NCBI GenBank assembly: GCA_030390025.1
Contig: CM059430.1
Location: 74,028,001 to 74,092,000 of the forward strand
DNA length: 64,000 bases
Reading direction: 5' to 3'
Source: Squalus acanthias
Lineage: Eukaryota
Shown here piece by piece: positions 3,267 through 62,860 of the stretch. The position numbers and the translations under genes are program-made. The first letter of the stretch is position 1. Every line of letters begins with the position of its first letter. The notes under the pieces are model-generated. The model made no database searches, had not been told where the DNA came from, and saw only the letters and a list, made by a program, of their open reading frames with translations.

Positions 3267-3300
3267 GGCTCTGTTCGAGTTTGTGGGTGATTTTGCGAAG

Positions 3301-14143: not shown

Positions 14144-15289
14144 TATGTCAAATGGCGATTCCGAACATCGTCAGGAAATAGAAATCTATGAGAACAAGGC
14201 TACATAATGAAATTATAATTTTGGATTGGTGTTCCGATAGAGACCACTGAAACAACCGGGGTAACTACAAACTTAACCCCAGCTGTACAGGACGCGACTC
14301 TGATTATTAATTAACCGCAGATGGATCTCGCAATTCAATCACGTTCACCGATCAGCTTTCCTTTCCAATTGAAAACACTTTTGCTTGAACAAAGACTTTG
14401 AATTTCATGATTTTTTATTCAATCAATTCAGTAACAAGACATGGAAAAATACTTTTCAAACAGCTGTAGAAAGCTTAAGGCAAGGGTCAATAACAAGTAT
14501 AAAGATTGGCAAATTACTCACGTTAAATATATAACATGATAAACAATTTTAAATTTATTCCAGAAATGTTATTTCAATCAAAGTATAACGTTTGTCAATA
14601 TTTCAGAAAGGAGATGGAGAACTTTTGAATGACTCTCTTCGGTCCAGTGTCCACAGCAAAGGAGCAGATGAAGAGATGGGGTGGCGTCTTACATCTATCT
14701 TCTACAACGAGTATCACTTTCTTCTGAAACACTGATACGAGAAAATGTAAAAAAAATATTAGTTATCTATTTCCCTCAAATGAAGCTCTCAATGATCAGC
14801 GACTTGATCAGCAGAAGATTCCATTGCCACTTTTAAATAGATACATGGCTATGGGGTCCGAGCACCCTTTACTGCTTTCTGAACTGAACCTGCCCATACA
14901 CTATGGGCTCCTCTTGCCCTTTCGGTTTGGTCTATGTCTTCTGACCGAAAAAGTCCAGCGCATAGTAGGTCAGCCTTTCTTAAGCTACCATTTCCGGAAT
15001 CTGTAGTAATGTTCAGAAATGGCGTTAATATTCTGTATTCAACAGCCTAACGATTGCTACCTCAAACAACATTGGATATTGCTGCATAGCTTGAAGCAAA
15101 TGTGACGTGCGTGTATCAACCAAAACTTCTCTCACCCTCCTGAAGCGGCTCCAGCATGCACTCCTGCACCTCAACCCTGATCCACGTTATCAAATTAAAC
15201 TCAACATATATGGGCCTCCGTGTTGTGTATACACGATTATGATCGTAAAATAACAACGAAAACCTCAGCAATGAAAGATTCGTGTAAGT

Positions 15290-16979: not shown

Positions 16980-18199
16980 TAGCAAAATACTGCGGATGCT
17001 GGTAATCCGAAATAACAGCAGAAAACTTCGGAAAAACTCAGCAGGCCATCAGCATCCGTGGAGAGAGAAACAGAGTTAACGTTTCAGGTCGAAAACCTTT
17101 CGTCAGAACTGGGAAAAAGCAGTAAATGAAATAGATTTAAAGCAAGTATAATGCTGGAAAAAGGGGAAAGGAATGAAAGAACAAAAGGGAAGGTCAGTGG
17201 TAGGAGAGAAAGCAGCAGAGATTAAGAGACATTGAGAGACATTAAGACATATTCAAGGCAAGAGGAGGTGGTAATGTGACAGGCTGAGGCTAGATGAAGT
17301 GTGAAATGCGCTGGCAGAATGAAGGACAGCTGTCAGCTTCTGGGAGGGATGAAAAAAGACCAAACAAAAGGGTGGATGAAAAAATAAAATAAAAATATAT
17401 ATATATATATGTGATAGGGGTCGGGGTTATGATCTGAAATTATTGAACTCTTTATTGAGTCCAGAGAGCTGTAGAGTGCCTAAACGAAAGATGAGGTGCC
17501 TATCCTCGAGCTTACGCTGAGCTTCCATGGAACAAAGCAAGAGGCAGAGTACAGTGGGGTCAGAGTGGGAGTGGAGCGGAGAATTAAAGTGACAAGCCAC
17601 CGGTAGATCGGCGGACCCCTTACGGACTGAACGGAGGTGTTCTGCAAAGCGGTCACACAATCTGAGTTTGGTCTCCCCAATGGAGAGGAGACAACATCGT
17701 GAGCAGCGAATACAGTATACTAAATTGCAGGAAGTACAAATAAATAGCTGTTTCACCTGGAAGGGCTGTTTCGGGCCCTGGACAGTGGGAAGGGGGGACG
17801 TATAAAGGCATGTGTTGGATCTCCTGCGCTTGCAGGGGAAGGTGCCGGGCGAAGGGGAAGGGGTGCTGGGGGTGGTACCAGTGCTTCCGACATGTCTTCC
17901 TTTTTCCTCAAACAAGGATTCCCCTCTACTGTGTTTGACATGGCCGTCCACCGTGTCCGTTCTATCTCCCGCACTTCTGACCTCACCCCTGCCCCTCCCT
18001 CCCGGAACCACGATAGAGTTCTCCTTGTCCTCACCTTTCACCCCACCAGCCTGCACTTTCAACGGATCATCCTCGGCCATTTCCGCCACCTCCAGCGTGA
18101 TACCACCACCAGAAGCATCTTCTCCTCACCTCCCATTTCAGCATTCCGCAGGGACCGCGCCCTCCACGACACCCGACTCCACTCCTCTACCACCCCCAG
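16980..18199 (-). mobile_element. Penelope-like element, 3' part with GIY-YIG endonuclease and an inverted 5' segment
   Basis: Minus 17427-17877 encodes PCKRRRSNTC...NLVYCIRCSRCCLLSIGETKLRLCDRFAEHLRSV...PVACHFN. Plus 17880-18199 encodes the upstream linker MSSFF...VLTFHP...AFRRDRALHD. Confidence 0.9.
17074..17110 (-). ncRNA. Minimal type I hammerhead ribozyme in the Penelope pseudo-LTR
   Basis: AGUU CUGACGA A AGGU-UUUCG-ACCU GAAA CGUU AACU: both cores, 4-bp stems I and II, palindromic AACGUU. Confidence 0.8.
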
Positions 18200-21019: not shown

Positions 21020-23575
21020 ATAAGAACGTAAGAACAAAATAATTAGGTGCAGGAGTAGGCCATACGGCCCTTCGAGCTAGCTCTGCCATTCACGAAGATC
21101 ATGGCTGATCTTCGACTTCAACACCACTTCCAGTCCGATCCCCATATCCCTTGATTCCCCTGGAATCAAAAAATCAATCTAATTCAATATGAATATGCTC
21201 AACGACTCAGCATCCACAGCCGTTTTGAGCAGATAATTCGAAAGTTTCACAACCCTCTGACTGAAGACATTTCTCGTCAGCTCAGTCTTAAATGGCCGAC
21301 CTCTTATCCTGACACAATATCACCTAGTTCTAGATTTGCCAGTCAAGGGAAGCAACCTCTTGTGAAGGAATAGTCATGATTCAGAAAAATACAAGATACT
21401 AAGAACAGATTTCTGAAATTATTAAAAAATGACATACTGGGTTTAAAAGACCTCAGCCTTCGCAGACAAGGCTGCAGGCAGAAATATAGGCTTCTGAGAT
21501 AAAGATCAGTTGTAAACAAAGTTGTAAAACACCACAAGCTTTGATATGGGAATGGGATATTGACAAAGACGAAGCCCCTATTGAAGCAAACCATTGGAGG
21601 TTCTTCTATGTCTGAACATTGGAACCAACACAATGGAATCACCCAATTTAAAGTGTTAAAAGCTAACACTGATGCAAACAAAAATTTAGAATATTAAACA
21701 ACCATAAGCCTTCATAATATAACATCAAATAATACAGGAAACACGATTAAATATGCAACCCATTGAGATAGATGGAAAACAAGTAAACACTGAGTTAAAG
21801 TGTTTTCAATTTACATATTGTAAATATGATACATACAGAAGGCTTTGAAGAAATGACATCAAGTAAACTAAACGCCTGCTGAACAAATACTTTTAATGTT
21901 AAGCTTGAAATATGGAGTCCCGAGATCTGATAAAAACAAATTGAACTAAATAAGAAATGTATGGAACACTCTAGATGAAGTATGTACAAGTTGTAAAATA
22001 TACCTAAATAAATACTTTGAAAATGACATCAATGGATGCATCAAGCAATCACATTGTTTATGTGTTAAACCTGGAGCATGCAGGAGACACGACGTCTGGT
22101 AATAACCAGTAAAGCCAATATTAAGAATTGAATGGGAGACCTTCGGTAAGAATTGCATCAAACAGAAACCATTGCTGTCATTGTGTTTATGATGATTTTT
22201 GAAACATCAAAGGTAGAGACATAATTATGCATGCAATGGCTAAATTGACAGTAAAGACAAAAAGCATTCAACAGAGATATCAATAAAGATAATTAGCTTA
22301 CATCATCATGAAAACCTCAAAGGATAAACCACCCAAAAAAGATATAAAAAGAAGAGCTTTTCAAATGGAAAGTCAGAAGTCGCTGGGAAGACAAGCGTTT
22401 CTCAACTTCACAGACCTTCTCTGTAAGTTTTTAACTCTTGAATCTCGGGTAATCAAGGTATTTGATTTTGGTGGTTATTCTGGATTAAGAAATAAGTAGA
22501 AGTGTGGAAATGTAACGAAGTTAATATTTGAGAATAAGGATCTCTGATAAGAAATGTAAGCTATTTGTATTTTGAATGATCAAAGTTGCGATTGCCTTAG
22601 CAGCTGTTTACTAAATGTCGGTTCTTTAATAAATCTAGATATTTTAAGAATTGTCTCACAGAGTATTTATGTATCATCTTGCAAAGTCAAATTTCTGTAC
22701 ACTCAAAGGAGTTGCAGAATTCTGGGGGGTATTCCGGACCCTCATAATGTCTGGAAGGTTACAGTGTAGTTAAACTTATTAAAAGTAATATCCGGAGGAC
22801 GGTAACATCTTTAGATCGTTTCTTTCCTTTAGGGAGAGGTAGTCTGACCTTTAGACCCCATTAAGCGTCTTATAGGATCCGGCTACCGCTGACTTTAGTT
22901 GAAGGTAAACGTCTGGGGAATACGCCTGATCTGGGGCAGTCCGAAAGGGCTAGGACTTGTAATTATCCCTTCACTCTCAGCATCTACCCTGTCAATTACA
23001 CTCGGAATCTAATATGTTTCAATGATATTACCTCCCATTCTTCTAAACTCCAGATTGTATAGGTCCAATCTACTGAATCTCTTCTCACAGGACAACTCTC
23101 TCATCCCGGTGACCCACCGAGTGAACCTTTGTTGCAATGCCTCTCAGGCACATATTTCTTTTCTCAGATAAGGTGACTAAAACTGTGCACAGTACTCCAG
23201 ATGTGGTCTCCCCAAAGCTCTGTGCAATTGAAGTAAGACATCCTTACTCTTGTAGTGCAAACCACTTGCAATAAAGGCCAACATGCCATTTGCATTTCTA
23301 TTTGCTTGGTGTGCCTGCATGCTAAATTTCTGTGTTTCCTGTACAAGGAAACCTAAACCTCTCTGAACACAAACATTTAATAGTTTCTCACCATTTAAAA
23401 ATAATCTGTTTTCTATTGTTCCTACCAAAGTGAATAACCTCAAATTTAGCACATTATACTCCATCTGCCACCTTATTTCCCACTCATGTAACCTGTCTAT
23501 ATCCATTTGTAGGCTCTGTGTGGCCTCCTCGCAGCTTACTTTCACATCTAGCTTTGTATAATCAGCAAACGTGTC
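21020..23575 (-). mobile_element. CR1 3' portion split by an LTR insertion at 21361-22973
   Basis: Joining 21360 to 22978 restores AGCAACCTCTCAGCATCTACCCTGTC, as in other CR1 copies (compare the reverse complement of about 47012-47045). RT C-terminal ORF 23177..23632. Confidence 0.85.
21361..22973 (+). mobile_element. Solo LTR (1613 bp) of an endogenous retrovirus or LTR element, foamy-virus-like layout
   Basis: TG...CA termini (TGTGAAGGA / TCCCTTCA); 4-bp TSD CTCT (21357-21360, 22974-22977); TATAAAAA at 22343; GTAAGT at 22423; AATAAA at 22628. Confidence 0.8.
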
Positions 23576-24128
23576 TCCCCTCGCACTGTATCTTGAACGT
23601 TGCTCGCTATAACTAAACAAAGCAGAACCCATCCCTTATATATGCCTCAGACAGCACACTAATTCCGTTGATGCAACACAAATAAGTTTGTGCGGGATGG
23701 GGCCAAGACATGGCCATGCCCAGTGCTCAATTCCTTTAGACTGGCTTCCCAAGAATCCAATGCCTTTCTCACGTCCCTTATTTGGACTTGTCCTTTTTTC
23801 CCTTGAGGTTTCTTATCTGTTGTGAACGAGCACACTACATCATTGTTCATTGTCCTTTGTAAAATGAGAACTGAAGTGATAATAGGAAGACTATAATCTG
23901 AACCCCTTCCGTGTCCATTGCGCTTTATAAGCTTAATTTTACAGCAGAATAAAACTATACGTGAACAAAACTTCGTACAAACCTGTAATGTAGTGAAGCA
24001 TAACACTGAAAGGTAATAGAAGGCATTGTAATCTAACAGTGAGAGTTTATCGATGGAACAAAGGGCTAACATTTATTTGCTTCTATAGGCAGGGGGGGAG
24101 AATGCATTTGCCGTGCTGTAATAATATT

Positions 24129-25581: not shown

Positions 25582-28500
25582 AATAATTGTAAAAACTGCA
25601 ATTTCTAAGTCACGCCACTAAAACAACAAAAAAAAAACACAAGCCAGTCAGAAACTGCGGTGAGAAACGATAGTTAATACTTGGGAGTCGGTTCCACTTC
25701 TGCACGCAACAATGACACATCAACATTTTAATATAACCCGGTAAACGGGGAGTGGGTGGGAGGGGAACAATAAAGAAAGTGAGGAACTATTGCTGGAATC
25801 GTAATATATTGCAGTAAATATTCAGCTGTCAGGAAATAGAATGAGCCCTTAAGAAATTAAAGACATTGAACAAAAAATTAACTCGAACAATTGAAGCAGT
25901 AAGAAACATCAGAAGGAGAAAAGCGCGTACACATGAGAATGGGAAATAGAGAAATAGAGAAGATTTAATCCCCTTCTTTAATGGCACAGGCGGAATCACG
26001 GGAAAGAACAGCACGGAATCAGACTGCAACCAAAATCATGGAGAATAATGTAGTGATTCAACATGTCAAACTTGATTGCGAGCTCACAGGGGATGGGAAC
26101 AGCTTTGACAGTTGCAAAGAAGCCAGTTGTGATTTTGACTGACACACAGTGCGTGAGTTCGAAGCTGGAAAGGAGCGTTTCCAATAAAGAATGGTGGAAG
26201 GCAGCAACTCGTTCCAGGACTTGGGAAAAAATGCAATGCCTGGAGACAGGCCAGCAACACAGTAAACTAGACAAGCAACGTTTATAATTTAAAAAATCCC
26301 TGGAATCTTTTCAGCACATCCATGTTTGTCCAATTTAGCTTGTGGTCTTCACCGCTGCGTATACTAGACTTGCTTCCTTTTTTTTAGATTCCGACGTTTT
26401 CTTGGAAGCAGTAAAATTCGGAGCAGCGTAAGTCAGTTTGCTATCAGCGTCTCCATGTTTGATCTGTAGAACAAACAATTGTTTTAATTTAATTTTTAAA
26501 GCAAAAGGAAAATTACGTCAGGTTAATTCTAAGTGTCATCTCAACCAAATTATTCTGATTTGTATGATTGTTGTTTCTACGTGTGAACATTTTTTGTACC
26601 TCTGTATATATTGTACTCGCTTCGTGTTGTTTAGGTTTTGCAGTTTTCTTGGAACCGATCAGATCCAGATCAGCGTACGTCAGCTTATCGTCAGCTGCCC
26701 CTCGTTCTTTCTAGAAAGTCAATGTTTAGCTTTCATTGAGTTACTTTTCCTGGAGTTTCAAGAGTCACGAAGCCTTTACATATAATAAACAATTGCAGTA
26801 GCATAATGTCAGTGGCTTGTTTTTATTTCTGCAGAGGATTAATTTAATTTACAATTTCTTTCATAAATCAACTACTCACTAGTGAACAATATCGAAACTT
26901 CAATTTATTAGAAAAAGCTAAGACTTTAGTAAACTAACGAATCTTAAATTTTAACATTTTGAAAGTTAGTGCAAATTTTTAAAATAATAAAAAGTGAAAT
27001 ATCAGTTTTTAGTTTTTCTTTCTGTCTCTTGTAACTCTCTCACATCATCATCTTTTTCACTCTCTTTATTTCGCTTTCTGTACATGATTTTACACTGAAT
27101 TAAATCTAATTCTTACTTCCTGGTTTATACTTCCTAGTTTAAAGACTGTTTCTGAGAAAGGATTCTTCAAACTGATTGGTTGAAGAGCCACGCTGTTGTA
27201 TGCTCAGGTCGCACACGGCAGAGATCCGGGGCGCCATGTAGGATCAGAACTCTAATTACAACAAGTTACTGCTCAAAAGAACGCAACAAGTCTGTGGGTA
27301 GCTATCAGAGTATTGAACGGCGAGTGCCTTTCCTCCACCGCTGACCGAATGATCCGGGCCGTTGAACTTCTGAAGGACTGAGTCTCCACCCTTGTAAAAG
27401 TAAATGTTCAATACCAGAGTGGTTGTTTGGCAATGAATCACGGCGTAATAAAATCACTTACACCTGAATGCGACAGCGCTAACATTTTCAGTTCTGTTTC
27501 GCGCCTAACTTGTGGGTTTTAATGCTACTTCACACTTTGATTTCAATGCAGAATGTTTCGATGAGATACAGGAGCAGGAAAATCGGACCACAACTGCCGT
27601 ATTTTCGTGTTTAACTGTGAATGTGCGAACTCCAGAATTTGCTGTCTGATTTACTCCATAATAAAGCTGAGCGCTGATAATTTCAGCGTTATTCTTGACA
27701 CAGAATCCGGGTTCATAATTTGCCACTCAAAAGCCTCCATATAGTCTATGGGCAGCGCCATTCCTTCCTTGCTGAAACTAAAATCCTGAAAAATAAGTCA
27801 ATTAGAGTGATGAATCAATCTTACGTAGATAATCACGTAAATAAATATGGCCCCCAACAAAATAGGAAGGTAATTGTTTGGATTGGCAGCTGCAAGCTAA
27901 TTTTTGCGTCAGCGAAGTGTGGGAGGGCAGAGGAATATGTAAATGCATTTGCATAGAGGCGACGAGTTACTGTGTATGCCCCAAAGTGCTCCAATGGAAA
28001 TTACTTATTTCTATAACATAGATGCTGCTTTTATTTAGGCAAATGTGGAATCTAATTCGTGCAGAGAATGGTCGCGCAAATAACAATGAAATAAGTAACA
28101 AGTGTTGTTGGTATTGGCTAAAGAACCAATGATGGCTGCAACACATGAGCACAGGTACATAGGGACATGAGTAGGCCATTTAGCCCCTCGAGCCTGTTCC
28201 GCCATTCAGTGAGATATTGGTTGATCAGCTACCTAACTCCATATACCCGCCTTTTCCTAAAGAACTCCCCTGCTCTTTGTGAAATCTTGCCGTGGGATCT
28301 TTTATGTGCACTTTATCAAGCACATGAAGACTTGATTTTTCGTCTCATCTAAAACACGGCACCTGGTACAATGCAACACTCCATGGGGAATCCACGTGAA
28401 CATCAGTCTACATTATACGATCAGCAGCTGCAGTGGGGCTTCAACAAATGGCTTCCTGGATCGACTTAAGAGTGCGATAAAGAAGTAAATAACTTAGAGA

Positions 28501-34627: not shown

Positions 34628-34671
34628 CCGATCTTCATGCTGAGAAGTATTTACTGAATTTCTCTTTGCAC
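34628..34671 (-). CDS. Cytoplasmic exon 2 (GAKRNSVNTSQHEDR)
   Basis: Acceptor TTTATTTCCCACCAG, donor CGG/GTAAGG; 44 nt, phase 1 to 0. Confidence 0.65.
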
Positions 34672-37600
34672 CTGGTGGGAAATAAATTTGAAATTAATCG
34701 CCAAGAACGGAGTAATATTTCCGCTGCACGTCAGAACAGCTAAATCAACTGTAATTAGGTTAGTTCACGGGTTGTAATAGGAGTACAAGTATCACGATAT
34801 AACTTCAATTTTTTTAAATAAGAGCGCTCCCCGATTGTAACTGTGTTCTGTCCCTTGTGATGAAGTTGTGCAAGCTTCATTATACCCCCAAAAAATTACT
34901 GCTACAGATCAGCATCTACACCAAAACGGTTTAGGAATTCCCAGATACGAGCCTGCTATAGTCATGTCATGATCTAATCTTTAGTTCAAGCAATCAGATA
35001 CGGAGATGTATGTTTGAAGAATTTTTACAGTAGCCCGTCAGTAATATTGTACCATTCAGATCCTCCGCTTGTAATGATGACTGTAATCTGCCCTTTCGTT
35101 CCCTACCTGCAGGGAAGTATTTGTTACAGTATCAATTATAAAATTAATTTCTAATTTTAAAATGTTTTAAAATCTGCTGTTAGAAAGACTGTGATCAACA
35201 CAGGCGAAACGGTTCGTACCTTTAGATGTAACTAATTGGTGTCCTGTCACAATCGAAATGATCAACAGCAGAATTACCACCGCACCCACGGCACATCCAG
35301 CGAACAGAGGAATATTGATCGTGGACTCAAAATCTATGAGATTGATAGCAAATCAAAATCAGAAACTGTGGAATGTAAAAAGCATATTCACACTTTTCAA
35401 CGTCAAAGCATATTTTGCCAATATACTCCAATGAGAATACAATAATACAGTACAATAAGTCTCAGCACGTCCATTTTGTTATTTCCATATTCAGCTGATT
35501 TGTATGATATCAGAAACGGAGAGTTTGAAACACCTCGTAGTTTGGATAATTAGCAGCAATGCGAAATATGGAGAAAAAACACATCAAATGTTCCTCTTCT
35601 AATTGATTGGAATAAAGGACAATGGGAAAAGACTCAATCTGGTCGCGACGTGTGGGAAAAAATCATTTTGGATGTTTTATCTGATCAATATATAGGAAAA
35701 ATGCTTAAATACATTATAATGGAACGTGTTTACAAATTTATTGGAGGTGCCCTTCGGAGCACTTCAAAACGAAGACTCTCTCCTTCTTTCCATAAGAAGG
35801 AGGCAAGCAATTATTATTTGGTACAGTGTCGGGGGAGTCGCACTGTGCATTTGATGATGCCGGGACAGATATTGGATTGCTTCATGGCTGCGGGAGTGTG
35901 TAAATGCTAAATTCCCCCTCTCCATTCCTCCAGTCCTCACTAACTTTACCAGTCCCTGCAATGCATTGTGCGATTTCTGGCATCAATCCCTCACAGTGCC
36001 TTCTCTGCGTGCATTTCCAATGCTTTGGCTGTTAAGCTGATTTATGATAACTAAGCTGAGTTCTGCTGTCCACTGTCAGCGAGGTTGCTTATGTCTAATT
36101 TCATTCTGATCAGATCCTAATAGCCAACAGAAAGGCAGTCTTCACCCAATCAATGGAAGCTGGAGTAAAACCAGACTTCGGAGCTGACTGAATGATATGC
36201 AAACAACTGCAGTATACATTTCCCGAAATTCCTTGCATTAACCCATTATCTGCGATGGAAAGTCGATTATAGCAAGAAAAACACAGAGATCGACAAATAT
36301 GTTACGTGTGCTACAACATTACCTTTGTTAGCAAAGGTGTAGCTGGCATTTGCGGGAATTGAGTTTGAAACGTGATATACTTTACAGGTATAAACTGTGC
36401 CCCGCTCAATTGGTTTTGTCTCTTCTAAGGAGCTGATAACTTCATATAGACCCTCTGGCTTTGGCTGTTGTTCAGTTAGAAATCCTGCCGCAATTTCGGT
36501 ACCGTTTTTTTGCCAGCTGATGTTAAAATCCATCGGATAAAACGCAGCCGATCTGCACTGGAGTCTCAGAAAAGCAGATGAAGTCCCTTCGGATGGCATG
36601 GGGACAATATTCAGCGGAGCCGGTACAGCTAAATGAAAATAGCAACAACAGATAGAGCAAAACATTTGACATGTATACTACCTGCTCATTCTTTTTAAAA
36701 AGATAACCACCACCTGTGTTCATGCATCGTAGCTGTATCGATAGTTATTAATGACACTGACTGGAGCCGAATTTAACAGGTTCTTCACTATATCCAGAGA
36801 CATTATTTCCAGAGTTTCCTGCCCTACAGTATTGACGTATCACTGTTATATTGAACGCAATTATTTTAAACATCGGGCCTCTTTTTTTATTGATATCAAT
36901 GTGTCAGTACAATGTTAGAGAAGCAAGGGTCTAGTGAGAAGGAGGAATTAAAGGAAATTAGTATTAGTAAAAAAATAGTGTTGGATAAATTAATGGAACT
37001 GAAAGCCGATACATTCCCAGGGCCTGACAATCTGCATCCCAGAGTACTAAAAGTGGTAGCCATGGAAATAGTGGATGCATTGATTGTCATCTTCCAAAAT
37101 TCTATAGATTATGGAACAGTTCCTGCAGATTGGAGGGTGGCAAATGTAACACCACTCTTAAAAAAATGAGGGAGAGAGAAAACAGGGAACTAGAGTATGG
37201 TTAGCCGAACATCAGTAGCAGGGCAAATGCGAGAGTCTATGAAAAAGGATGTGATAACTGGACACTTAGAAATTATCAATTCGATTAGACAGAGTAAACA
37301 TGGATTTATGAAAGAGAAATCATATTTCAAAAACCTACTGGAGCTTTTTGAGGAATGTTTGGTGGAATAGATAAGGGAGAACCAGTGGATGTGGTGTATT
37401 TGGATTTTCAGAAGGCCATTGATAAAGTCCCACAATAGAGGTTAGTGTGCAAAATTAAAGCACATGCGATTCGGGGTAATATACAGGCATGGATTGAAAA
37501 TTGGTTAACAGATAGGAAAGAGGGAGTAGGAATAAATGGGTCTGCTTCGGGGTGGCAGCCGGTGAATAGTGGGGTACTACAGGGATCAGTGCTTCGGCTC

Positions 37601-39907
37601 CAGCTATTCAACATATATATCAATGATTTGGATGAGGGAGCCAAATGTAATACTTCCAAGTTTGCTGACGGCACGAAACTAGGTGCGATTGTGAGTTGTG
37701 AGGAGGATGCAAAGTGGCTTCAAGGCGATGTAGACACGTTCAGTGAGTGGGCAAATACGTGGCAGATGCAGTATAACGTGGATAAACGTGAAGTTATCCA
37801 TTACGGTAGAAAAAACAGAAAGGCAGGCTATTATTTTAATGGTAAGAGATTGGGAAATGTAGATGTACAAAGGGAACTGCGCGCCCTTGCAAACCAGTCA
37901 CTGAACGCAAACATGCAGGTGCAGCAAGCAATTAGAAAGGCAAATGGTATGTTAGCATTCATTGCAAGGTGATGTGAGTACAGGAGCAAGGATGTCTTAC
38001 AACAGTTATACAGGGCCTTGGTGAGACAACACCTGAGTACTGTGTGCAGTTTCGGTCTCCTTACCTAATAAAATATATATTTGCCACAGAGCAAGTGCAG
38101 CCACCGTTCACCAGACTGATTCCTGGGATGACAGGACTGTCGGATGAGGAGAGATTGGGTCGAGCATGGCTGTATTCAGTACAGTTTAGAAGAATGAGAG
38201 GGGATCTCATTGAAAGGTATAACATTCTGACAGGGCTAGACTTATTGGATGCAGGGAGGATGTTTCCTTTAGCTGGGGGTCGAGAACGATGCGTGACAGA
38301 CTCAGGATACGGGGTAGGACATTTAGGACTGAGATGAGGAGAATTTTCTTCAGTCAGAGGGTGGTGAACCAATGGAATTCTCTACCTCATAAGGCTGTGG
38401 CGGCCAAGTCACAGAATATATGTAAGAAGCCGATAGATAGATTTCTCGACACAAAAGGCATCAAGGGGCATGGGGAGAGAGGGGGAATATATATTGAGAT
38501 AGAGGATCAGAAATGATCATATTGAATGGCGGAGCAGGCTCGACGTGCTGAATGGCCTACTCCTGCTCCTATTTTTCTATGTTTCTATGTTTTCGAATCG
38601 GCATTTTGTGCTTAAACTACGGCAATACTGCAAGTCGAGTTTTATTGATCATAGAGTACATTTTCCTTTTCTGGATAGAAAGGATCTAATTAGAACCTCT
38701 GTCTGGACTACGGCACGTGGTTTATCGTGTGCATCTCGCCAGTTTTACCGAACAGCGGTTCAGGATTTTTTTCCAGGTAGCAGAAATTGCAAGCGTTCCG
38801 TCTAAATGATAGGGATGTGATTGTTTGGTCTCCTCTCCTCTTCTTTCAAAATCAGATATTGGGCCTTTAAACATGTTTAACATTGCAAATAACCCTAAGG
38901 CTTTTCATCCTGCTTCTCAGTGCTAAAATTAGAAAGACCCGTTTTATTTCCCAGCCTTGAATTCACTTTACTTGATAAACATACAATTAAATCACAATTG
39001 ATGATAAAGCTAATTTGTCAAATTATTCAATGACGCTGGAACAGGAAACGGTTCCTTATTTTTGAACACGTGTCGTTGCAAACAAGTAGAACGCTGTACT
39101 GGTTTATATACAGGGCAATTCCCTATTGAAATTCCTTGTTAAGCGTAGTATCAATATCGACACCAAGTAAACTCTTCAGGATTCCAGTTCCACTAACACT
39201 TACCGTATACAACAAGTTTTACACGAGTTCCTTTTCCCACCGGTTGATCCCCATCTTTGGCTACACAGCGATACGATCCTGCGTCCGGGATCTTCACATA
39301 GAGAAGGTGAAGGTAGGCGCCGCCTTTCTTTACTTGAAACAGTTTTCTGCTATCTTCTTGCAGGATGGTATCGTTACCCTCTCTCCACCAATAAACGTTT
39401 ACGTTTGAATGGTTCAGATGGAAGGGGAAAGGGCATTGTAAGGTAAGGTTTGCACCTATGAGCGCTTTCATTTCTACAATGCCCGTAGTGACCTTACCCG
39501 AAGTGTCCACAGCAACTATCAACAAAATAAGCCACTCGGGTTAAATAATTAATAAAAAAGGAATGGATCGGCACCAACAAACAACATCGTGATATATTAT
39601 TATTTGAATGTATCTATCTATCAGAATTGTTCTCCAGTTGCTGAACGCGTTTTCTTGGTTAATTATCATAAATAACATTACCCTGCTCATCGAGATGTAT
39701 CCCTCTGGCAAGGTACACATATAATCATAATAATACATCAAATTAAACCAGCGGAAACATGTTTGCGTAGTACACTAACTTAGATATCAAATTCATGTGT
39801 TGTTTCTTCTTCAGGAAATCGTAAATATGTAACAACAAAGATAAAAGTCTACCTGGATAAAAAATGCTAAGGAAACACAGGCCCCAAAGTGCTCCACTCA
39901 TAAACAT
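34628..39907 (-). CDS. Ig-superfamily type I membrane receptor, leader-VJ-C1-TM-cytoplasmic (non-rearranging antigen-receptor-like; NKp30/SIRP/tapasin-like domain set); 3' end not located
   Basis: Six GT-AG exons 39907-39853, 39515-39204, 36628-36323, 35333-35220, 35106-35053 and 34671-34628 join in frame (phases 1,1,1,1,1, then 0) to give 885 nt / 295 aa without stops. Confidence 0.9.
35053..35106 (-). CDS. Cytoplasmic exon 1 (GRERKGRLQSSLQAEDLN)
   Basis: Acceptor TACTTCCCTGCAG, weaker donor G/GTACAA; 54 nt, phase 1/1; basic juxtamembrane residues. Confidence 0.65.
35220..35333 (-). CDS. Transmembrane exon (DFESTINIPLFAGCAVGAVVILLLIISIVTGHQLVTSK)
   Basis: Acceptor CAATCTCATAG, donor AAG/GTACGA; 114 nt, phase 1/1; hydrophobic run of about 23 aa. 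Not in the ORF track. Confidence 0.85.
36323..36628 (-). CDS. C1-set Ig domain exon
   Basis: LQCRSAAFYPMDFNISWQKNG...EGLYEVISSL...YTCKVYHVS carries the C1 signatures; acceptor TTTTCATTTAG, donor AAG/GTAATG; 306 nt, phase 1/1. Confidence 0.93.
36900..38590 (+). mobile_element. CR1-type LINE (5'-truncated) in the V-C1 intron, antisense to the gene
   Basis: PGPDNLHPRVLK, WRVANVTPL, SGVLQGSVL, SKFADGTKL; 3' tail TTTCTATG repeats. Close relative of 55500-57260. Confidence 0.92.
39204..39515 (-). CDS. V-set Ig domain exon with germline-encoded J-like G strand
   Basis: GANLTLQC...VYWWR...LHLLYVKIPDAGSYRC...VGKGTRVKLVV; acceptor TTTTGTTGATAG, donor G/GTAAGT; 312 nt, phase 1/1. Confidence 0.93.
39853..39907 (-). 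CDS. Leader (signal peptide) exon MFMSGALWGLCFLSIFYP
   Basis: ATG at 39907 (alternative 39901); hydrophobic core; donor CAG/GTAGAC, phase 1. Confidence 0.82.
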
Positions 39908-54719: not shown

Positions 54720-57700
54720 GGCAGCGATAAAGGGGAATCAATTATCTGAATATGCACTGGGGAAATAACATTGTTTAGGGCAAAGAATGGTCGTAATTTC
54801 TGAAATGTGTACAATATAACATGGCTGATCAGTTTATTTCCAGGCCAAAGAGGAACGAAGCAGTACTGGATTTAGTTCTGGGGCATGAAGTCAGGAAGGT
54901 GGAGCATGTTTCAGTGAGAAACAGCATTTGGGATGCAGAGATTACAATATCTGCTGTACTAAATAAGCACTTACCATCTGTCTTCACGAATGAAGAGAAT
55001 GCTGTCTCTGTCACAGAACAGGAGGTGTTAGTGGCGTAACTGGATAGGATAAAAATACATAAAGAGGAGGGCACGCTTAAAATAGAGAAATCACTCGGTC
55101 CAGATAGGCTTATTCTTAGGTTGGTGAATGAAGTAAGGGTGGAAATTGTAGAGGCTCAGGCCACAATCTTCCAATCCTCCTCAGGTATGGGAGTGGTGAC
55201 AGAGGACCTAAGGTTAAAGGCAACTCTTGTTTTACTAACTTAACTGAGTTATTGATGAATTAACGGAAAGTGTGCATGAGGATTTGCGGTTCATGTTGTG
55301 TATATTGTCTTTCAAAAAGCGTTTGATAAAGCACCACGTAATATACAGTTAGCAAAATTGAAACCCATAGGATTAAAGGGGTTGTGGCTAGATTGATACG
55401 AGATTGACAAAGGGTTAGAAAGCAAAGATTAGTGGTGAAAGGTTGTTTTACGGACTGGAGGTAAGTGCGCATTGTTGCATCCCAGGGGACAGTGCTCTTG
55501 TTGATTGGAGATGATACAGTCAGAAACGGGAGAATTTATAATGCGGAACAAAGAAATTCAGAGCAATTTAACAAATACTTTGGTTCTGTCTTCACGGAAG
55601 AGAACATAAGTAACTTCCCGGAAATGATAGGGAACCAAGGATCTAGTGAGAAGGAGGAATTAAAGGAAATTATTATTAGTAAAACAAATAGTGCTGGAGA
55701 AATTAAATGGGAATGAAAGCTGATAAATCCCCAGGGCCTGATAATCTGCATTCCAGTGTACTAAAAGTGTTAACCATGGAAATAGTGGATGCATTGTTTG
55801 TCATCTTCCAAAATTCTACAGATTATGGAACAGTTCCTGCAGATTGGAAGATGGCAAATGTAACCCCACTATTTCAAAAAGGAGGGAGAGAGAAAACAGG
55901 GAACTACAGACCGGTTAGCCTAACCTCAGTTGTAGGGAAAATTCTAGAGTTCATTTTAAAGATGTGATAACAGGACACTTCCAAAATATCAACGGGATTA
56001 GACAAAGTCAACATAGATTTATGACAGGGTAATCGTGTTTGACAAACCTAATGGATGTAACTGTTAGAATAGATAAAGGAGAACAAGTGAATGTGGTGTA
56101 ATTGGATTTTCAGCAGGCCTTTGATAAAGTCTCACATAAGAGGTTAGTGTGCAAAATTAAAGCACATGGGATTGTAGGTAATATACCAGCATGGATTGAA
56201 AATGGTAACAGACAGGAAACAGAGAGTAGGAATAAATGTGTCTTTTTCGTTGTGGCAGGCGGTTAGTAGTGGGGTACCTCATGGATCAGTGCTTGGGCCC
56301 CAGCTATTCACAATATATATCAATGATTTGGATGAGGGAACCAAATGTAATGTTTCCAAGTTTGCTGACTACACGAAACTAGGTGGGATTGTGACTTGTC
56401 AGTTGGATGCAAGGAGGCTTCAAGGCTGTTTAGACAAATTGAGTGAGTGGGCAAATACATGGCAGATGCAGTATATTTGGTTAAATGTGAAGTTAGCCAC
56501 TTCGGTAGGAAAAACAGAAGGTAGAGTATTATTTAAATAATGATAGATTGGGAAATGCTGATGTAAAAAGGGACCTGGGTGTCCTTGCACACCATTCACT
56601 GAAAGCAAACATGCAGGTGCAGCAAGCAGTTAGGAAGGCAAATGGTATGTCGGCCTTCATTGCAAGAGGATTTGAGTACAGGAGCAAGGATGTCTCACTA
56701 CAGTTATACCTTGGTGAGGCCACACCTGGAGTACGGTTTACTACATGGGGTATACTTCCCTTAAAGGGAGTGCAGCGATGGCTCACGAAACTGATTCCTG
56801 GGATGGCAGGACTGTCGTCTGAGGAGGGATCGGTCGACTTGGTCTGTATTCACTAGAGTTTAGAAGAATGAGAGGGGATCGCATTGAAACGTATTAAATT
56901 CTGACAGATCTAGACAGATTGGATGCAGGGAGGATGTTTCCCCTGGCTGCGGGGTCTAGAACGAGGGGTCACAGTCTCAGGATACGGAGTATGATATTTA
57001 GGACTGAGATGAGGAGAAATGTGTGTTGAACCTGTGGAATTCTCTACCACAGAAGGCTGTGGAAGCCAAGTCACTGAATATATTTAAGGAAGAGATAGAT
57101 ACATTTCCAGACACATAAGGCATCAAGGGGTATGGGGAGAGAGGGGGAATATGTTGTTGAGATAGAGGATCAGCCATTATCATCTTGAATGTCTGAGCAG
57201 ACTCGAAGGGCCGAATGGCCTACTCCTGCTCCTATTTGTCTATGTTTCTATATTTCTATACTAAACTCGTAAATGTAGTAAACGGTGAGTAGGACATCAG
57301 TAGAAATCAGGAGGGCACAGACAGGCTGGTCAAATGGGAAGTCACGTGGCAAATGAATTTTAACGCGTAGAAGCGTGAAGTGATTCATTTTGGGTGGAAA
57401 AATGAGGAGGGCAATATAAACTAAATAGTGCTATTTAAAAGGGTTTTCCCGAATAAAGAGACCTGAGAGTGTACATATACACGATTTTAAGGTGGAAGGA
57501 CAAGTTGAGAAGGCTGTTAAAATAAATACAGTAACCTTGGCTTTACAAATAGAGTACAAAAGCAAGGAGAACATGCTAAGACTTTATAAAACACTGGTTA
57601 ATCCCCAGCCGCAGGATTATTGCCAATACTGGGCACGACACTTCAGGAAAAATGTCAAGGCCTTAGAAATGGTGCACCGAACAGTACCAGCGATGAAAGA

Positions 57701-60079: not shown

Positions 60080-62860
60080 CAGTGGACCACTGGAAGCCAC
60101 AGAGAAAACGGCCCCAGAGACGTTTTTGAGGGAGGGGCAGGCCTGGCAGCTCAATATTCCGGGGTATAGAATCTTCAGGCGAGACAGAGGTGGGTGTAAA
60201 GAGGAGTGGGTGTGGCAATATTAATCGAGGAGTCAATTACTGCTGTAAGGAGGGATGATATCTTAGCAGGCTCCTCTAATGAGGACATATGGGTAGAACT
60301 TAAAAACAAAATGGGTGCAAGCACTTTGCTGGGAGTGTACTGTCGGCCCCCAAACAGTCAGGGGGAGATAGAGGAACAGATAAGTCGGCAAATCTCAGAA
60401 AAGTGTACAAATAATAGGGTAATAATAGTAGGGGATTTCAACTTCCCCAATATTAACTGGTATGGTCAGATTGTGAAAGGCTTAGAGGGTGTGGACATCT
60501 TAAAGTGCCTCCAGGAGAGCTTTTTGAGCCAGCATGTCGAAAGTCCTACAAGAGTGGGGGAGCTACTGGACCTAATTTTAGGGAATGTTGCCCTGCAAGT
60601 GGGAGAAGTGTTAGCAGGAGAGCACTTTGGTGACAGTGACCATAATTCGGTGAGATTTAAATTAGTCAAGGAGAAGGACAAAGATGGACCGGAAATAAAG
60701 GTTCTAAATTGGGGGAAGAACGATTTTAATATGATAAGTCAGGATATGGCCAAAGTAGACTGGGACCAGCTACTTGTCGGAAAATGCACACCAGAGCAGT
60801 GGGAGTCCTTCAGAAAGGAAATAGAGAGAGTACAACGGCAACATCTTCCCGTAAAGGTCAAGGTGGGACCAACAAGCCCAGGGCACCCTGGATTTTAAGG
60901 GATATACGAGAATTGATTAGGAAAAAAAGGGAGGCTTTCGGCAGATACAGAGGACTATGATCAGTGGAAGCCCTAGAGGAGTATAGAAAGTGCAGGGGGG
61001 TGATTAAAAAGGAAATTAGGAGAGCGAAGAGGGACATGAAATAACACTGGCGGGCAAAATAAAGGAAAATCCTAAATTGTGTTATAAGTATATTAAGGGC
61101 AAGAGGATAACCAGGGAAAGAGTAGGGCACATTAGGAACCAAAGTGGCAATGTGTGTGTGGAGCCAGAAGAAGTTGGTGGGGTTTGACATGAATATTTTG
61201 CATCTGTGTTCACTATGGAGATGACGATGTCGGCATAGAAATCAGGCAGGGGGATTCTGATATACTTGAACAAATTAGTATTGAGAGGGAGGTGGTACTA
61301 GCGGTTTTAGCGGGCTTAAAAGTGGGTAAATCCCCAGCACCTGACGAGATGTATCCCAGCCTGCTGTGTGAGGCAAGGGAGGAGATTGATGGAGCTCTGA
61401 CACAAATTTTCAGAACCTGTCTGGCCACAGGGGAGGTGCCAGAGGACTGGAGAACAGCTAACGTAGTACCATTATTCAAGAAGGGTAATTGGGATAAACC
61501 AGGGAATTACAGAGCAGTGAGCCTAACATCAGTGGTAGAGAAATTATTGGAAAAAATTCTGAGCGACAGAATAAGTCTCCACTTGGAGAGGCAAGGATTA
61601 ATCAAGAATAGTCAGCATGGCTTTGTCAGGGGGAGATCATGTCTGACCAATTTGATTGCATTTTACGAGGGGTTGACTAGGTGTGTGGAAGAGGGTCGTG
61701 CATTTGATGTGTTCAACACGGACTTCAGTAAGGCTTTTGACAAAGTCCCGCATGCGAGACAGGTCAAGAAGGTAAGAGCCCATGGGATCCAGGGCAACTT
61801 GGCACATTGGATCCAAATTTGGCTTAATGGCAGGAGGCAGAGGGTGATGTTCGAAGATTGTTTTTGTGACTGGAAGCCTGTGTCCAGTGGTGTACTGCAG
61901 GGATCGGTTCTGGCTACCTTGCTGCTTGTAGTGTACATTAATGATCTAGATATGAATTTAGGAGGTATGATCAGTAAGTTCGCAGATGACACGAACATTT
62001 TTGGGGTGGTAAATAGCGAGCAGGGTAACCTCAGGCTGCAGGACGATATAGCCGGTTTGGTCAGATGGGCAGAACAGTGGCAAATGGGATTTATCCCTGA
62101 AAAGTGTGAGGTGATGCATTTTGGGAGGATTAACAAGGCATGGGAATACACAATGAATGGTTCGACCCTAGGAAGGACAAAGGATCAGTGGGACCTCGGT
62201 GTGTTTGTACATAGATACCTGAAGGTAGCTGGACAGGTAGATAAGGTGGTTAAAAAGGCATATGGAGCTGTACAAAACACTAGTTAGGCCACAGTTGGAA
62301 TACAGTGCGCAGTTCTGGTCGCCACACTATAGGAAGGATGTGATTGCATTGGAGAGGGTACAGAGGAGATTCATCAGGATGTTACCTGGGCTGCAGCGCT
62401 TCAGCTATGAAGAGAGACGGGACAGGCTGCGGTTGTTTTCCTTAGAGCAGAGAAGGCTGAGAGGGGACCTGAGTGAGGTGTACAAAATTATGAGGGGCAT
62501 AGATAGGGTAGATAGAAAGGAACTTTTTCACTTAGTAGAGGGGTCAATAACCAAGGGGCATAGTTTCAAGCTAAGTGGCAGGAGGCTTAGAGGGGATTTG
62601 AGGAAAAACTTTTTCACCCAGAGGGTGGTTGGAATCTGGAACTCACTGCCTGACAGGATGGTAGAGGCAGGAACCCTCACGACATTCAAGAAGCATTTCG
62701 ATGAGCACTTGAAACGCCACAGCATACAAGGCTACGGACCAAGTGCTGGAAAATGGGATTAGAATAAATAGGGCTTGATGGCCGGTGCGAACCCGATGGG
62801 CCGAAGGGCCTCTTTCTGTGCTGTATAACTCTATGACGCTATGACTCTATGACTCCATGC
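60080..62860 (+). mobile_element. CR1-type LINE, near-complete ORF2 (APE endonuclease and RT) plus 3' UTR
   Basis: ORFs 60206..60898 (GVYCRPP, GDFNFP, SDHN), 61292..62287 (DFSKAFD, QGSVL, FADDT) and 62262..62762; tail (CTCTATGA)n at about 62829-62858. Confidence 0.95.

What the first reader, a model, noticed from the sequence alone, without database searches (positions are those of the whole stretch)
34628..39907. Germline-joined VJ-C1-TM receptor: antigen-receptor architecture without rearrangement
Seen: an intact multi-exon gene whose single V exon already includes a J-like GKGTRV strand, followed by a true C1-set domain, TM and a multi-exon tail. No RSS flanks it, and the ectodomain has six N-glycosylation sequons. 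Established: C1 domains are largely limited to Ig, TCR, MHC, B2M, tapasin, SIRP and some B7 members, and a non-rearranging VJ gene is the predicted substrate for the RAG transposon insertion. Inference: member of a little-characterised cartilaginous-fish receptor family related to the antigen-receptor precursor. This is the best candidate for an undescribed system in the window.
Basis: partly seen in the sequence, partly recalled or inferred. Interest (0 to 1): 0.85.

Follow-up and report, generated by a model that had tools for sequence, protein, structure and literature searches.

The report
Cartilaginous-fish inhibitory VJ-C1 receptor gene
This is an intact, transcribed gene for a cell-surface immune receptor whose outer part looks like one antigen-receptor chain and whose inner tail carries inhibitory tyrosine motifs like mammalian SIRP-alpha; it belongs to a large shark, ray and chimaera gene family that I could not find described in print.

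Summary
On the minus strand lie a leader exon, one V exon that already contains a J-like strand, one true C1-set exon and a transmembrane exon. No RSS is nearby and the ectodomain has six N-glycosylation sequons.

The gene is longer than reported. It runs on to 26335, and two distal exons carry four tyrosine motifs in two pairs, arranged like the SIRP-alpha tail. Spliced contigs from public runs join V to C1 and TM to the first tail exon at the predicted GT..AG sites.

Relatives were found only in cartilaginous fishes (16 species). Automatic names disagree: SIRP-alpha/beta/gamma-like, tapasin-related-like, B7-H6-like, Ig-lambda-like. The family holds ITIM-tailed members and short-tailed members with an arginine in the membrane span, so it is a paired inhibitory/activating family.

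By sequence the ectodomain is no closer to SIRP than to Ig/TCR, B7-H6 or UrIg2, so orthology to any named gene is not shown.

My reading: a non-rearranging, SIRP-like-by-design inhibitory receptor. The link to the antigen-receptor precursor remains conjecture. First-stage notes of this scan list the same kind of gene at eight other places in this genome; I could not check them.

The parts
39853..39907 (-). Leader exon: ATG at 39907, 18 codons plus 1 base, phase 1 out, GT donor
   Evidence: Exon table. It is 61% identical over 18 residues to the N-terminus of homologue P0012 (E 0.017). No RNA contig covers it.
39204..39515 (-). V exon, 312 nt. Ig V-like domain with an in-exon J-like G strand (GKGTRVKLVV) and three N-X-S/T sequons
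   Evidence: Pfam. 69% identical to P0010/P0157. Contigs of runs X1, X2 and X3 lie on it with 0-1 mismatches. An X2 contig joins 39204 to 36628.
36323..36628 (-). C1-set Ig exon, 306 nt, with three sequons and Cys-13 residues-Trp spacing
   Evidence: C1-set E 1.1e-11. 71% identical to P0157. Contigs of X1 (36342..36601, 0 mismatches) and X2 lie on it.
35220..35333 (-). Connecting peptide plus transmembrane exon. The membrane span has no charged residue.
   Evidence: Translation. Family HMM E 2.5e-06. An X2 contig covers 35218..35335 and joins on to 34671.
34628..34671 (-). First cytoplasmic exon, 44 nt. It changes the phase from 1 to 0.
   Evidence: 73% identical over 15 residues to P0012.
26600..26710 (-). 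Second cytoplasmic exon, 111 nt: first tyrosine pair, LTYADL and TIYTE(I), 23 residues apart
   Evidence: tblastn with P0010 gives E 1.4e-11, 69% identity. Family HMM E 8.6e-09. AG/GT sites. BLASTP to both tyrosine pairs of rodent SIRP-alpha, E 2e-04 and 2e-03.
26335..26463 (-). Last coding exon, 129 nt including the TAA stop: second tyrosine pair, LTYAAP (degenerate) and LVYAAV, 23 residues apart
   Evidence: tblastn with P0012 gives E 1.3e-08, 56% identity up to the homologue's own C-terminus. Family HMM E 3.7e-04. Sequence.
36822..38761 (+). Decayed LINE reverse-transcriptase fragment inside the V-C1 intron, antisense to the gene. It is not part of the product.
   Evidence: RVT_1 E 5e-08 for ORF 37445..37972. 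Contig depth is in the thousands over 36822..38761 in all four runs, as expected of a repeat.

Best explanation
The locus is an intact, transcribed seven-exon gene (39907 down to 26335, minus strand) for a 356-residue type I membrane glycoprotein.

The domain order is: signal peptide, one V-like Ig domain whose J-like strand is encoded in the V exon itself (so no rearrangement is needed or possible), one C1-set Ig domain, an uncharged transmembrane helix, and a tail of about 95 residues.

The tail carries four tyrosine motifs in two pairs. Each pair is encoded by its own exon and its two tyrosines lie 23 residues apart. Two motifs fit the ITIM pattern, one fits the ITSM pattern and one is degenerate.

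Inferred mechanism: the V domain binds a still unknown ligand. Src-family kinases then phosphorylate the paired tyrosines, and a tandem-SH2 phosphatase of the SHP-1/SHP-2 type is recruited and damps activation of the cell. This is how SIRP-alpha works.

The gene is the inhibitory kind of member of a multigene family spread across cartilaginous fishes. The family also contains short-tailed members with an arginine in the membrane span. Those are presumed activating partners that would use an ITAM adaptor.

Shown here: gene structure, splicing of two junctions, domain types, motifs, and family membership and range. Inferred: ligand binding, phosphorylation, phosphatase recruitment, and the cell type that expresses it.
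For: Structure: the exon table has AG/GT at every boundary and the total is a multiple of three.

Splicing: an X2 contig joins 39204 to 36628 (skips 2575, GT..AG on the minus strand). Another X2 contig joins 35220 to 34671 (skips 548). In 3 of 4 runs laid, from 2 studies, contigs lie on exons. Non-repeat intron bins have depth 0.

Domains: C1-set E 1.1e-11; ig, Ig_3, I-set and V-set for the V exon.

Tail: found with homologues and with the family HMM. In homologue P0012 the motifs align in register with those of rodent SIRP-alpha from the membrane span to the C-terminus. The cyt2 exon matches both SIRP-alpha tyrosine pairs at 40-41% identity.

Family:
- 350 library proteins at E <= 1e-3. The single-domain hits run up to 69% identity.
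- Of 20 proteins looked up, 19 are chondrichthyan V-C1 or V-only members. The 20th is a lizard protein of a different build.
- The nearest relative outside cartilaginous fishes is rodent SIRP-alpha, at E 1.5e-11 with a single sequence and 1.1e-31 with the profile.
- For homologue P0012 the ESM Atlas puts two SIRP-alpha clusters first, both at score 0.96.

Paired nature: ITIM tails versus short tails with Arg in the membrane span. On the C1 tree the two kinds need at least 4 switches among 17 labelled rows, and starred branches force 3 of them. The window's C1 sits in a starred 13-row clade with 6 ITIM and 5 charged-TM rows.
Against: - No functional data exist.
- The runs are only guessed to be RNA and their tissues are coded. 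Each junction rests on one low-depth contig (about 5-6x).
- The leader exon, and the cyt1-cyt2 and cyt2-cyt3 junctions, are not covered by laid RNA. They rest on homology and splice sites.
- One of the four tyrosine motifs has Pro at +3, so it fits neither the ITIM nor the ITSM pattern.
- The last exon alone shows no significant match to SIRP-alpha.
- ITIM pairs occur in many unrelated receptor families, so the tail could be convergent.
- The V domain has no detectable similarity to SIRP V, so nothing suggests a CD47-like ligand.
Confidence: 0.8

Rival explanations
1. It is the cartilaginous-fish orthologue (or co-orthologue set) of SIRP-alpha itself: a CD47 receptor that has lost or never gained the second C1 domain.
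For: - RefSeq's most frequent automatic name for the family is SIRP-alpha-like.
- Rodent SIRP-alpha is the only non-chondrichthyan hit and the best one.
- The Atlas features put SIRP-alpha clusters first.
- The four-tyrosine tail aligns in register.
- Paired activating forms exist, as SIRP-beta does for SIRP-alpha.
Against: - The V exon scores 4.9 bits in all against SIRP-alpha, with no BLASTP alignment of the domain.
- No SIRP chain is among the 60 best PDB matches of the V-centred profile.
- The C1 exon scores 14.3 and 14.7 bits against SIRP D2 and D3. It scores 32-40 bits against Ig kappa C, 38.4 against IgNAR C and 29.7 against UrIg2 C3.
- There is one C1 domain, not two.
- Automatic names for close relatives also include tapasin-related, B7-H6-like, Ig-lambda-like and TCR-beta-like.
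- Synteny could not be examined.
Confidence: 0.1
2. One reading: the family is a surviving relative of the two-domain VJ-C1 gene from which rearranging antigen receptors arose. On this view it is closer to Ig/TCR/UrIg than to any innate receptor family.
For: - Its architecture is exactly that of one TCR or light chain: split leader, VJ, one C1, TM.
- The best single-V-domain PDB matches of the V-centred profile are shark VNAR (39.7 bits) and TCR-alpha V (39.2 bits), both aligned through the J region.
- The C1 exon's best single-domain matches are Ig kappa C, IgNAR C and UrIg2 C3.
- PMC12227049 (Fig. 2 legend, read) predicts a two-domain VJ-C1 ancestor for UrIg and the antigen receptors.
- A first-stage note places two such genes inside a light-chain array elsewhere in this genome (not checked).
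Against: - The score differences are small and come from ranked searches, not trees. PD-L1 V (38.5 bits), B7-H6 (40.0) and SIRP-alpha (39.2) score as high as Fab chains (40.5) against the closest full-length homologue.
- The same argument has long been made for SIRP (PMC2785349).
- ITIM tails and charged-TM partners are marks of innate paired receptors.
- No linkage to the MHC or to antigen-receptor loci can be read from this window.
Confidence: 0.12
3. It is a B7-family ligand (B7-H6/PD-L1-like) rather than a receptor.
For: PD-L1 V is the best named single V domain for the V exon alone (26.9 bits, E 4.2e-05). Some family members are auto-named NCR3 ligand 1-like. B7-H6 scores 40.0 bits against P0157.
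Against: The PD-L1 alignments stop before the G strand, whereas this V has a J-like strand. The paired ITIM tail and the charged-TM partners are receptor features. The constant domain is a full C1-set; the weak C2-set_3 and C2-set_2 scores fall below their cut-offs.
Confidence: 0.03
4. It is a decaying or non-functional copy whose open frame is accidental.
For: The window is full of LINE debris. One tyrosine motif is degenerate. A broken ITIM exon lies 11 kb downstream.
Against: All seven exons are open with canonical splice sites. Spliced contigs are present in public runs. All invariant family residues are kept.
Confidence: 0.03

Closest known systems
SIRP-alpha / SIRP-beta (signal-regulatory proteins, tetrapods)
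   Same: - N-terminal V domain with an in-exon J-like strand, followed by C1-set domain(s) and a TM span.
- A tail with four tyrosines in two pairs 23-24 residues apart.
- Paired short-tailed members with a basic residue in the membrane span.
- It is the nearest non-chondrichthyan hit.
   Different: One C1 domain instead of two. No detectable V similarity and only weak C1 similarity. Many dispersed copies. The ligand is unknown. That chicken SIRP has only V plus one C1 is my recollection of Viertlboeck 2006, which I saw only as a reference entry.
UrIg and UrIg2 (non-rearranging elasmobranch Ig-like genes; PMC12227049)
   Same: Single-exon VJ with a split leader, C1-type constant domain, no RSS, cartilaginous fish. 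UrIg2 is the top summed PDB hit of the C1 exon (61 bits over three domains).
   Different: UrIg has three C domains and is secreted. UrIg2 has 9-11 C domains and an IgM-like TM. Neither is reported with ITIM tails (passages read). Here there is one C1, a plain TM and an ITIM tail.
Ig light chains, TCR chains and IgNAR
   Same: V(J)-C1 order. The C1 exon scores 32-40 bits against kappa C and 38.4 against IgNAR C. The V-centred profile reaches VNAR and TCR-alpha V through the J region.
   Different: The V exon is germline-joined and spliced to C1 by ordinary GT..AG splicing. There is no RSS. The tail is a signalling tail.
NITR (teleost novel immune-type receptors); hagfish APAR and skate MDIR (recalled, not checked)
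   Same: Multigene families of paired inhibitory/activating receptors with VJ-like domains in fishes. NITR13 of grass carp is the second non-chondrichthyan hit of the family profile (E 2.7e-14).
   Different: The NITR second domain is not C1-set: the precomputed Pfam domains of P0178 lack C1-set. The V exon scores only 11.8 bits against NITR13.
B7-H6 / PD-L1 and tapasin-related protein
   Same: V plus C(1) ectodomains. These are the automatic names given to several family members. PDB scores are comparable.
   Different: No ITIM pairs or paired activating forms are known for these (recalled). The PD-L1 alignments stop before the J-like strand.

Membership tests
SIRP family | N-terminal V-set domain with an in-exon J-like G strand | tested here: met
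   Pfam. The G-K-G-T-R-V strand lies before the GT donor.
SIRP family | Sequence kinship of the V domain to SIRP V | tested here: not met
   4.9 bits in all against rodent SIRP-alpha. No domain-length BLASTP alignment. No SIRP among the 60 best of 1047 PDB matches of the V-centred profile.
SIRP family | Two membrane-proximal C1-set domains (mammalian definition, PMC2785349) | tested here: not met
   One C1 exon only. The RNA contig joins V to C1, and the TM contig ends in letters that fit the C1 exon's end. Homologues also have one C1.
SIRP family | Cytoplasmic tail with four tyrosines forming two ITIM pairs (SIRP-alpha) | tested here: met
   Four Y motifs in two exons with 23-residue spacing. 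Three fit ITIM/ITSM patterns. They are in register with P0170 in homologue P0012 and match it at E 2e-04.
SIRP family | Paired activating members with a basic residue in the TM (SIRP-beta type) | tested here: met
   Met at family level, not in this gene. Short-tailed members with Arg in the span: P0024, P0161, P0163, P0119, P0124, P0164, P0166.
SIRP family | Binds CD47; lies in the conserved SIRP gene neighbourhood | not testable with these tools
UrIg / UrIg2 | Non-rearranging single-exon VJ with a split leader | tested here: met
UrIg / UrIg2 | Three or more C1-type domains | tested here: not met
   One C1 exon. The definition comes from PMC12227049 passages.
UrIg / UrIg2 | Secreted form (UrIg), or IgM-like TM with central Leu-Leu-Ile-Phe (UrIg2) | tested here: not met
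   The TM exon translation has L-L-L-I-I, not L-L-I-F, and is followed by an ITIM tail.
UrIg / UrIg2 | Linkage to MHC class III (UrIg) or to the IgH/TCR-alpha-delta complex (UrIg2) | not testable with these tools
   The window holds no marker gene.
Rearranging antigen-receptor genes | V segment ending in an RSS, with J separate | tested here: not met
   No heptamer in 38900..39900. The J-like strand is in the V exon, which is spliced to C1.
B7 family | V domain kin to B7 V domains | tested here: inconclusive
   PD-L1 V scores 26.9 bits and 38.5 bits with the profile. That is no better than VNAR or TCR-alpha, and the alignments lack the G strand.
ITIM-bearing inhibitory immunoreceptors (functional class) | Type I membrane protein with an uncharged TM and at least one [ILVS]xYxx[ILV] motif in the tail | tested here: met
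   LTYADL and LVYAAV fit ITIM. TIYTE plus the next exon's I fits the ITSM pattern. The patterns themselves are recalled.
ITIM-bearing inhibitory immunoreceptors (functional class) | Phosphotyrosine-dependent recruitment of SHP-1/SHP-2 | not testable with these tools
   This needs biochemistry.

The most novel reading that the evidence does not exclude
This chondrichthyan family is not a SIRP offshoot. It is the closest living form of the two-domain, membrane-bound VJ-C1 gene that PMC12227049 predicts as the ancestor of UrIg and of the rearranging antigen receptors. On this view it still signals through ITIM tails and charged-TM partners, which would mean the antigen receptor began as a paired innate receptor.
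Probability: 0.12. Interest if true: 0.85.

Novelty: new variant of a known kind. Interest (0 to 1): 0.5.

Why it matters
Two recent papers (PMC10751288, PMC12227049) look in cartilaginous fish for non-rearranging VJ-C1 genes as relics of the gene that the RAG transposon invaded. A review states that the evolutionary origin of SIRPs is unknown (PMC9652883, passage read).

This family spans sharks, rays and chimaeras. Its members have exactly one VJ and one C1 domain, with inhibitory and presumed activating forms. That bears on both questions.
- It pushes SIRP-style paired VJ-C1 receptors back to the base of jawed vertebrates.
- It gives many sequences with which V and C1 trees of antigen receptors could be rooted.

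For this single locus the gain is modest. It yields a corrected full gene model and the recognition that the gene is an inhibitory receptor.

Tried and rejected
Candidate small exons at 35106..35053 and near 34860 have good splice sites. I rejected them because the RNA contig skips them and no homologue has matching residues.

A read-through ending of the tail after 34628 was my first idea. I rejected it once the depth arithmetic showed that the contig stops at 34628, and once homologues continued into 26710.

I looked for more Ig exons in the window. tblastn with the two exons found nothing below E 0.08. A family HMM run over 1,666 six-frame segments found only this gene's five longer exons, with the next best at E 1.

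Naming the family from PDB gave no separation. The family profile, the closest full-length homologue and a V-centred profile all put Ig, TCR, B7-H6, B7-H3, SIRP and UrIg2 in one score range. The profile kept 274 positions, so it was not purely V.

Literature: nine searches were run. One search was wasted because a short term matched unrelated words. None gave a paper on this family. Supplements were closed and I did not ask for them. The supplementary figures and tables of PMC12227049 and PMC10751288 may list further VJ-C1 genes.

Papers seen only as reference entries, not read: Flajnik 2023 J Immunol, Viertlboeck 2006, Dornburg and Yoder 2022. What I say about NITR, APAR and MDIR is recalled.

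I did not make a tree with Ig, TCR, UrIg, tapasin or B7-H6 domains, because no tool gave me those sequences as usable records.

Full report
WHAT IS THERE

The gene lies on the minus strand. My exon table:
- leader 39907..39853
- V 39515..39204
- C1 36628..36323
- TM 35333..35220
- cyt1 34671..34628
- cyt2 26710..26600
- cyt3 26463..26335, including the stop

Every exon has an AG acceptor and a GT donor. The Ig and TM exons are in phase 1. The total is 1071 nt, or 356 codons plus stop. The last two lie 7.9 kb further on, and I found them only through homologues.

Each exon was searched separately, and full-length comparisons used database homologues.

DOMAINS

The C1 exon is a clear C1-set domain (E 1.1e-11, 45.3 bits against a cut-off of 21). 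It has the 13-residue Cys-to-Trp spacing that PMC2785349 (passages) gives as a C1 hallmark.

The V exon scores ig 3.5e-07, Ig_3 3.8e-07, I-set 1e-05 and V-set 1.2e-05. Its V-set score of 25.9 bits is just under the cut-off of 26. Homologues pass the V-set cut-off.

The V exon is short, with 40 residues between the C-strand Trp and the F-strand Cys. It ends in G-K-G-T-R-V-K-L-V-V, close to the J consensus FGxGTx(L/V)xV quoted in PMC11599192, and a GT donor follows directly.

There are three sequons in V and three in C1. No RSS-like heptamer occurs within 38900..39900.

TRANSCRIPTION AND SPLICING

Five public runs were listed for the leader-V stretch and three of them hold part of it, from two studies. 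I laid four of the five runs.

Contigs of X1, X2 and X3 lie on the V exon, and contigs of X1 and X2 lie on the C1 exon, with 0-1 mismatches. X4 has none. Intron bins outside the LINE repeat have depth 0.

- One X2 contig joins 39204 to 36628.
- Another X2 contig joins 35220 to 34671, so it skips two small exon candidates I had considered. From the depth figures this contig covers only 34628..34669 on that side. It therefore stops at the predicted donor, with about 108 letters unlaid at one end and 7 at the other.
- That these unlaid letters are cyt2 and the end of the C1 exon is my inference.

The runs are only guessed to be RNA. The exon-only pattern and the GT..AG joints argue that they are. 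The leader exon has no contig. It rests on 61% identity to the start of P0012.

THE TAIL

cyt2 encodes L-T-Y-A-D-L and, 23 residues on, T-I-Y-T-E, followed by the next exon's I. cyt3 encodes L-T-Y-A-A-P and, 23 residues on, L-V-Y-A-A-V.

Rodent SIRP-alpha (P0170) has I-T-Y-A-D-L, T-E-Y-A-S-I, L-T-Y-A-D-L and S-E-Y-A-S-V. By my count on the alignment the spacing in each pair is 24 residues. The tail of homologue P0012 aligns with it in register.

The cyt2 exon matches both SIRP pairs at 40-41% identity (E 2e-04 and 2e-03, single comparison). cyt3 alone does not match (E 7.1). The membrane span has no charged residue.

THE FAMILY

A full scan of 1.84 billion representatives with the V exon gave 350 proteins at E <= 1e-3. 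Giant multi-Ig proteins lead by summed score.

The single-domain hits are proteins of 130-445 residues. I fetched 24 of them. Further ones came from word-indexed searches with P0012 (18 hits) and with a 25-row family profile (25 hits among 8,000 scored candidates).

Of 20 proteins looked up by name, 19 are from cartilaginous fishes. The 20th, P0126, is a lizard protein with three V domains and is not a member.

Sixteen species are named over. They include sharks, rays, a sawfish and the chimaera Callorhinchus.

Automatic names disagree: SIRP-alpha-like (most often), SIRP-beta-1-like, SIRP-gamma-like, tapasin-related-like, NCR3 ligand 1-like, Ig lambda-like, TCR-beta-like, MHC class II beta-like, CDON-like and uncharacterized.

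Within a species the members sit on one long contig. For Callorhinchus the accession numbers are nearly consecutive, which suggests tandem clusters.

The family has ITIM-tailed members, and it has short-tailed members with Arg near the start of the membrane span. On a C1-domain tree of 27 rows, 10 were labelled ITIM and 7 charged-TM. I left 10 rows unlabelled because they are fragments or fit neither rule. The label needs at least 4 changes, and starred branches force 3 of them. In 63 of 500 shuffles the count was as low. The window's C1 lies in a starred clade (97/96) with 6 ITIM, 5 charged-TM and 2 unlabelled rows (a quick tree with SIRP domains is).

WHAT IT IS NOT

It is not a rearranging gene.

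It is not UrIg or UrIg2. Those have three or 9-11 C domains and no ITIM tail (PMC12227049, passages).

Orthology to SIRP is not shown:
- The V exon scores 4.9 bits against SIRP-alpha.
- The C1 exon scores 14.3 and 14.7 bits against its two C1 domains.
- The same C1 exon scores 32-40 bits against kappa constant domains, 38.4 against IgNAR C and 29.7 against UrIg2 C3.
- The closest full-length homologue scores 40.5 (Fab heavy chain), 40.0 (B7-H6), 39.2 (SIRP-alpha) and 36.7 (UrIg2).
- The family profile scores 107.7 (UrIg2, four domains), 97.5 (SIRP-alpha, three domains), 89.3 (B7-H3) and 76-78 (light chains, two domains).
- A V-centred profile finds VNAR (39.7), TCR-alpha V (39.2) and PD-L1 V (38.5). 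No SIRP is among the 60 shown.

The ectodomain is therefore about equally far from every V-C1 protein, with a slight lean towards Ig/TCR. What is SIRP-like is the design (VJ, C1, ITIM pairs, paired partners) and the tail. The ESM Atlas features of P0012 also put SIRP-alpha clusters first (0.96), but that is a lead only.

SURROUNDINGS

The window has no other Ig-type exon and no other host gene that I could recognise. It is rich in LINE fragments. A decayed LINE reverse transcriptase sits in the V-C1 intron.

EARLIER NOTES OF THIS SCAN

Eight first-stage notes describe the same kind of gene elsewhere in this genome. Five are on the same piece, 1.2 to 11.8 Mb away, and three are on other pieces. 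I could not read those places. I had already reached the SIRP-like reading.

TOOLS THAT WERE CLOSED

The look-up of encoding contigs, structure prediction and the Atlas for new sequences were closed. There is therefore no synteny, no structural model and no fold search.

VERDICT

The gene is an ITIM-type inhibitory member of an unpublished but database-annotated paired VJ-C1 receptor family of cartilaginous fishes. It works, by inference, like SIRP-alpha. It fails two defining SIRP features, so I do not file it as a SIRP. The antigen-receptor-precursor idea stays open at about one chance in eight.

Noticed in passing
window 14878-14973 (minus strand): A decayed copy of a family tail exon. It has an AG acceptor and L-T-Y-Y-A-L and I-V-Y-G-Q-V motifs, but in-frame stops. 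It lies 11 kb downstream of the gene's stop, so it is probably the relic of a lost neighbouring paralogue.
   Followed up: partly
window 36822-38761 (plus strand): A LINE reverse-transcriptase fragment lies in the V-C1 intron, antisense to the gene. Contig depth over it runs from thousands to about a hundred thousand in all four runs, so it belongs to a very abundant, transcribed or DNA-carried repeat family.
   Followed up: partly
window 35053-35106 and about 34830-34862 (minus strand): Two open, phase-compatible mini-exon candidates with AG/GT sites lie between the TM exon and cyt1. The only RNA contig skips them and no homologue has them. They could be chance or rare alternative exons.
   Followed up: partly
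window 60206-62762 (plus strand); also 56196-56856, 3213-4801, 23177-23632: A nearly complete LINE with an endonuclease domain (Exo_endo_phos_2, 1.2e-12) and a reverse transcriptase (RVT_1, 1.8e-27). Several decayed copies lie elsewhere in the window.
   Followed up: partly
window 243-1430 (minus strand): A 395-residue ORF with a CX2CX4HX4C zinc knuckle. It looks like a retroelement Gag but has no Pfam match at E <= 1e-3.
   Followed up: no
window 17427-18089 (minus strand): A 220-residue ORF with no Pfam hit. Its cysteine-rich C-terminal half reminded me of the endonuclease of Penelope-like elements. That is recollection only.
   Followed up: no
database proteins P0160 and P0010/P0157: P0160 (546 aa, auto-named CDON-like) has two V-set and two C1-set stretches and looks like two adjacent family genes fused in one gene model. 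P0010 is an isoform model that skips the C1 exon, so V-only surface forms may exist.
   Followed up: no
database protein P0126 (lizard, auto-named titin homolog): A 398-residue protein with three V-like domains, a TM span and a two-motif ITIM tail. Its second domain scores 30.6 bits against the window's V exon, so it may be a distant reptile counterpart of VJ-type inhibitory receptors.
   Followed up: no
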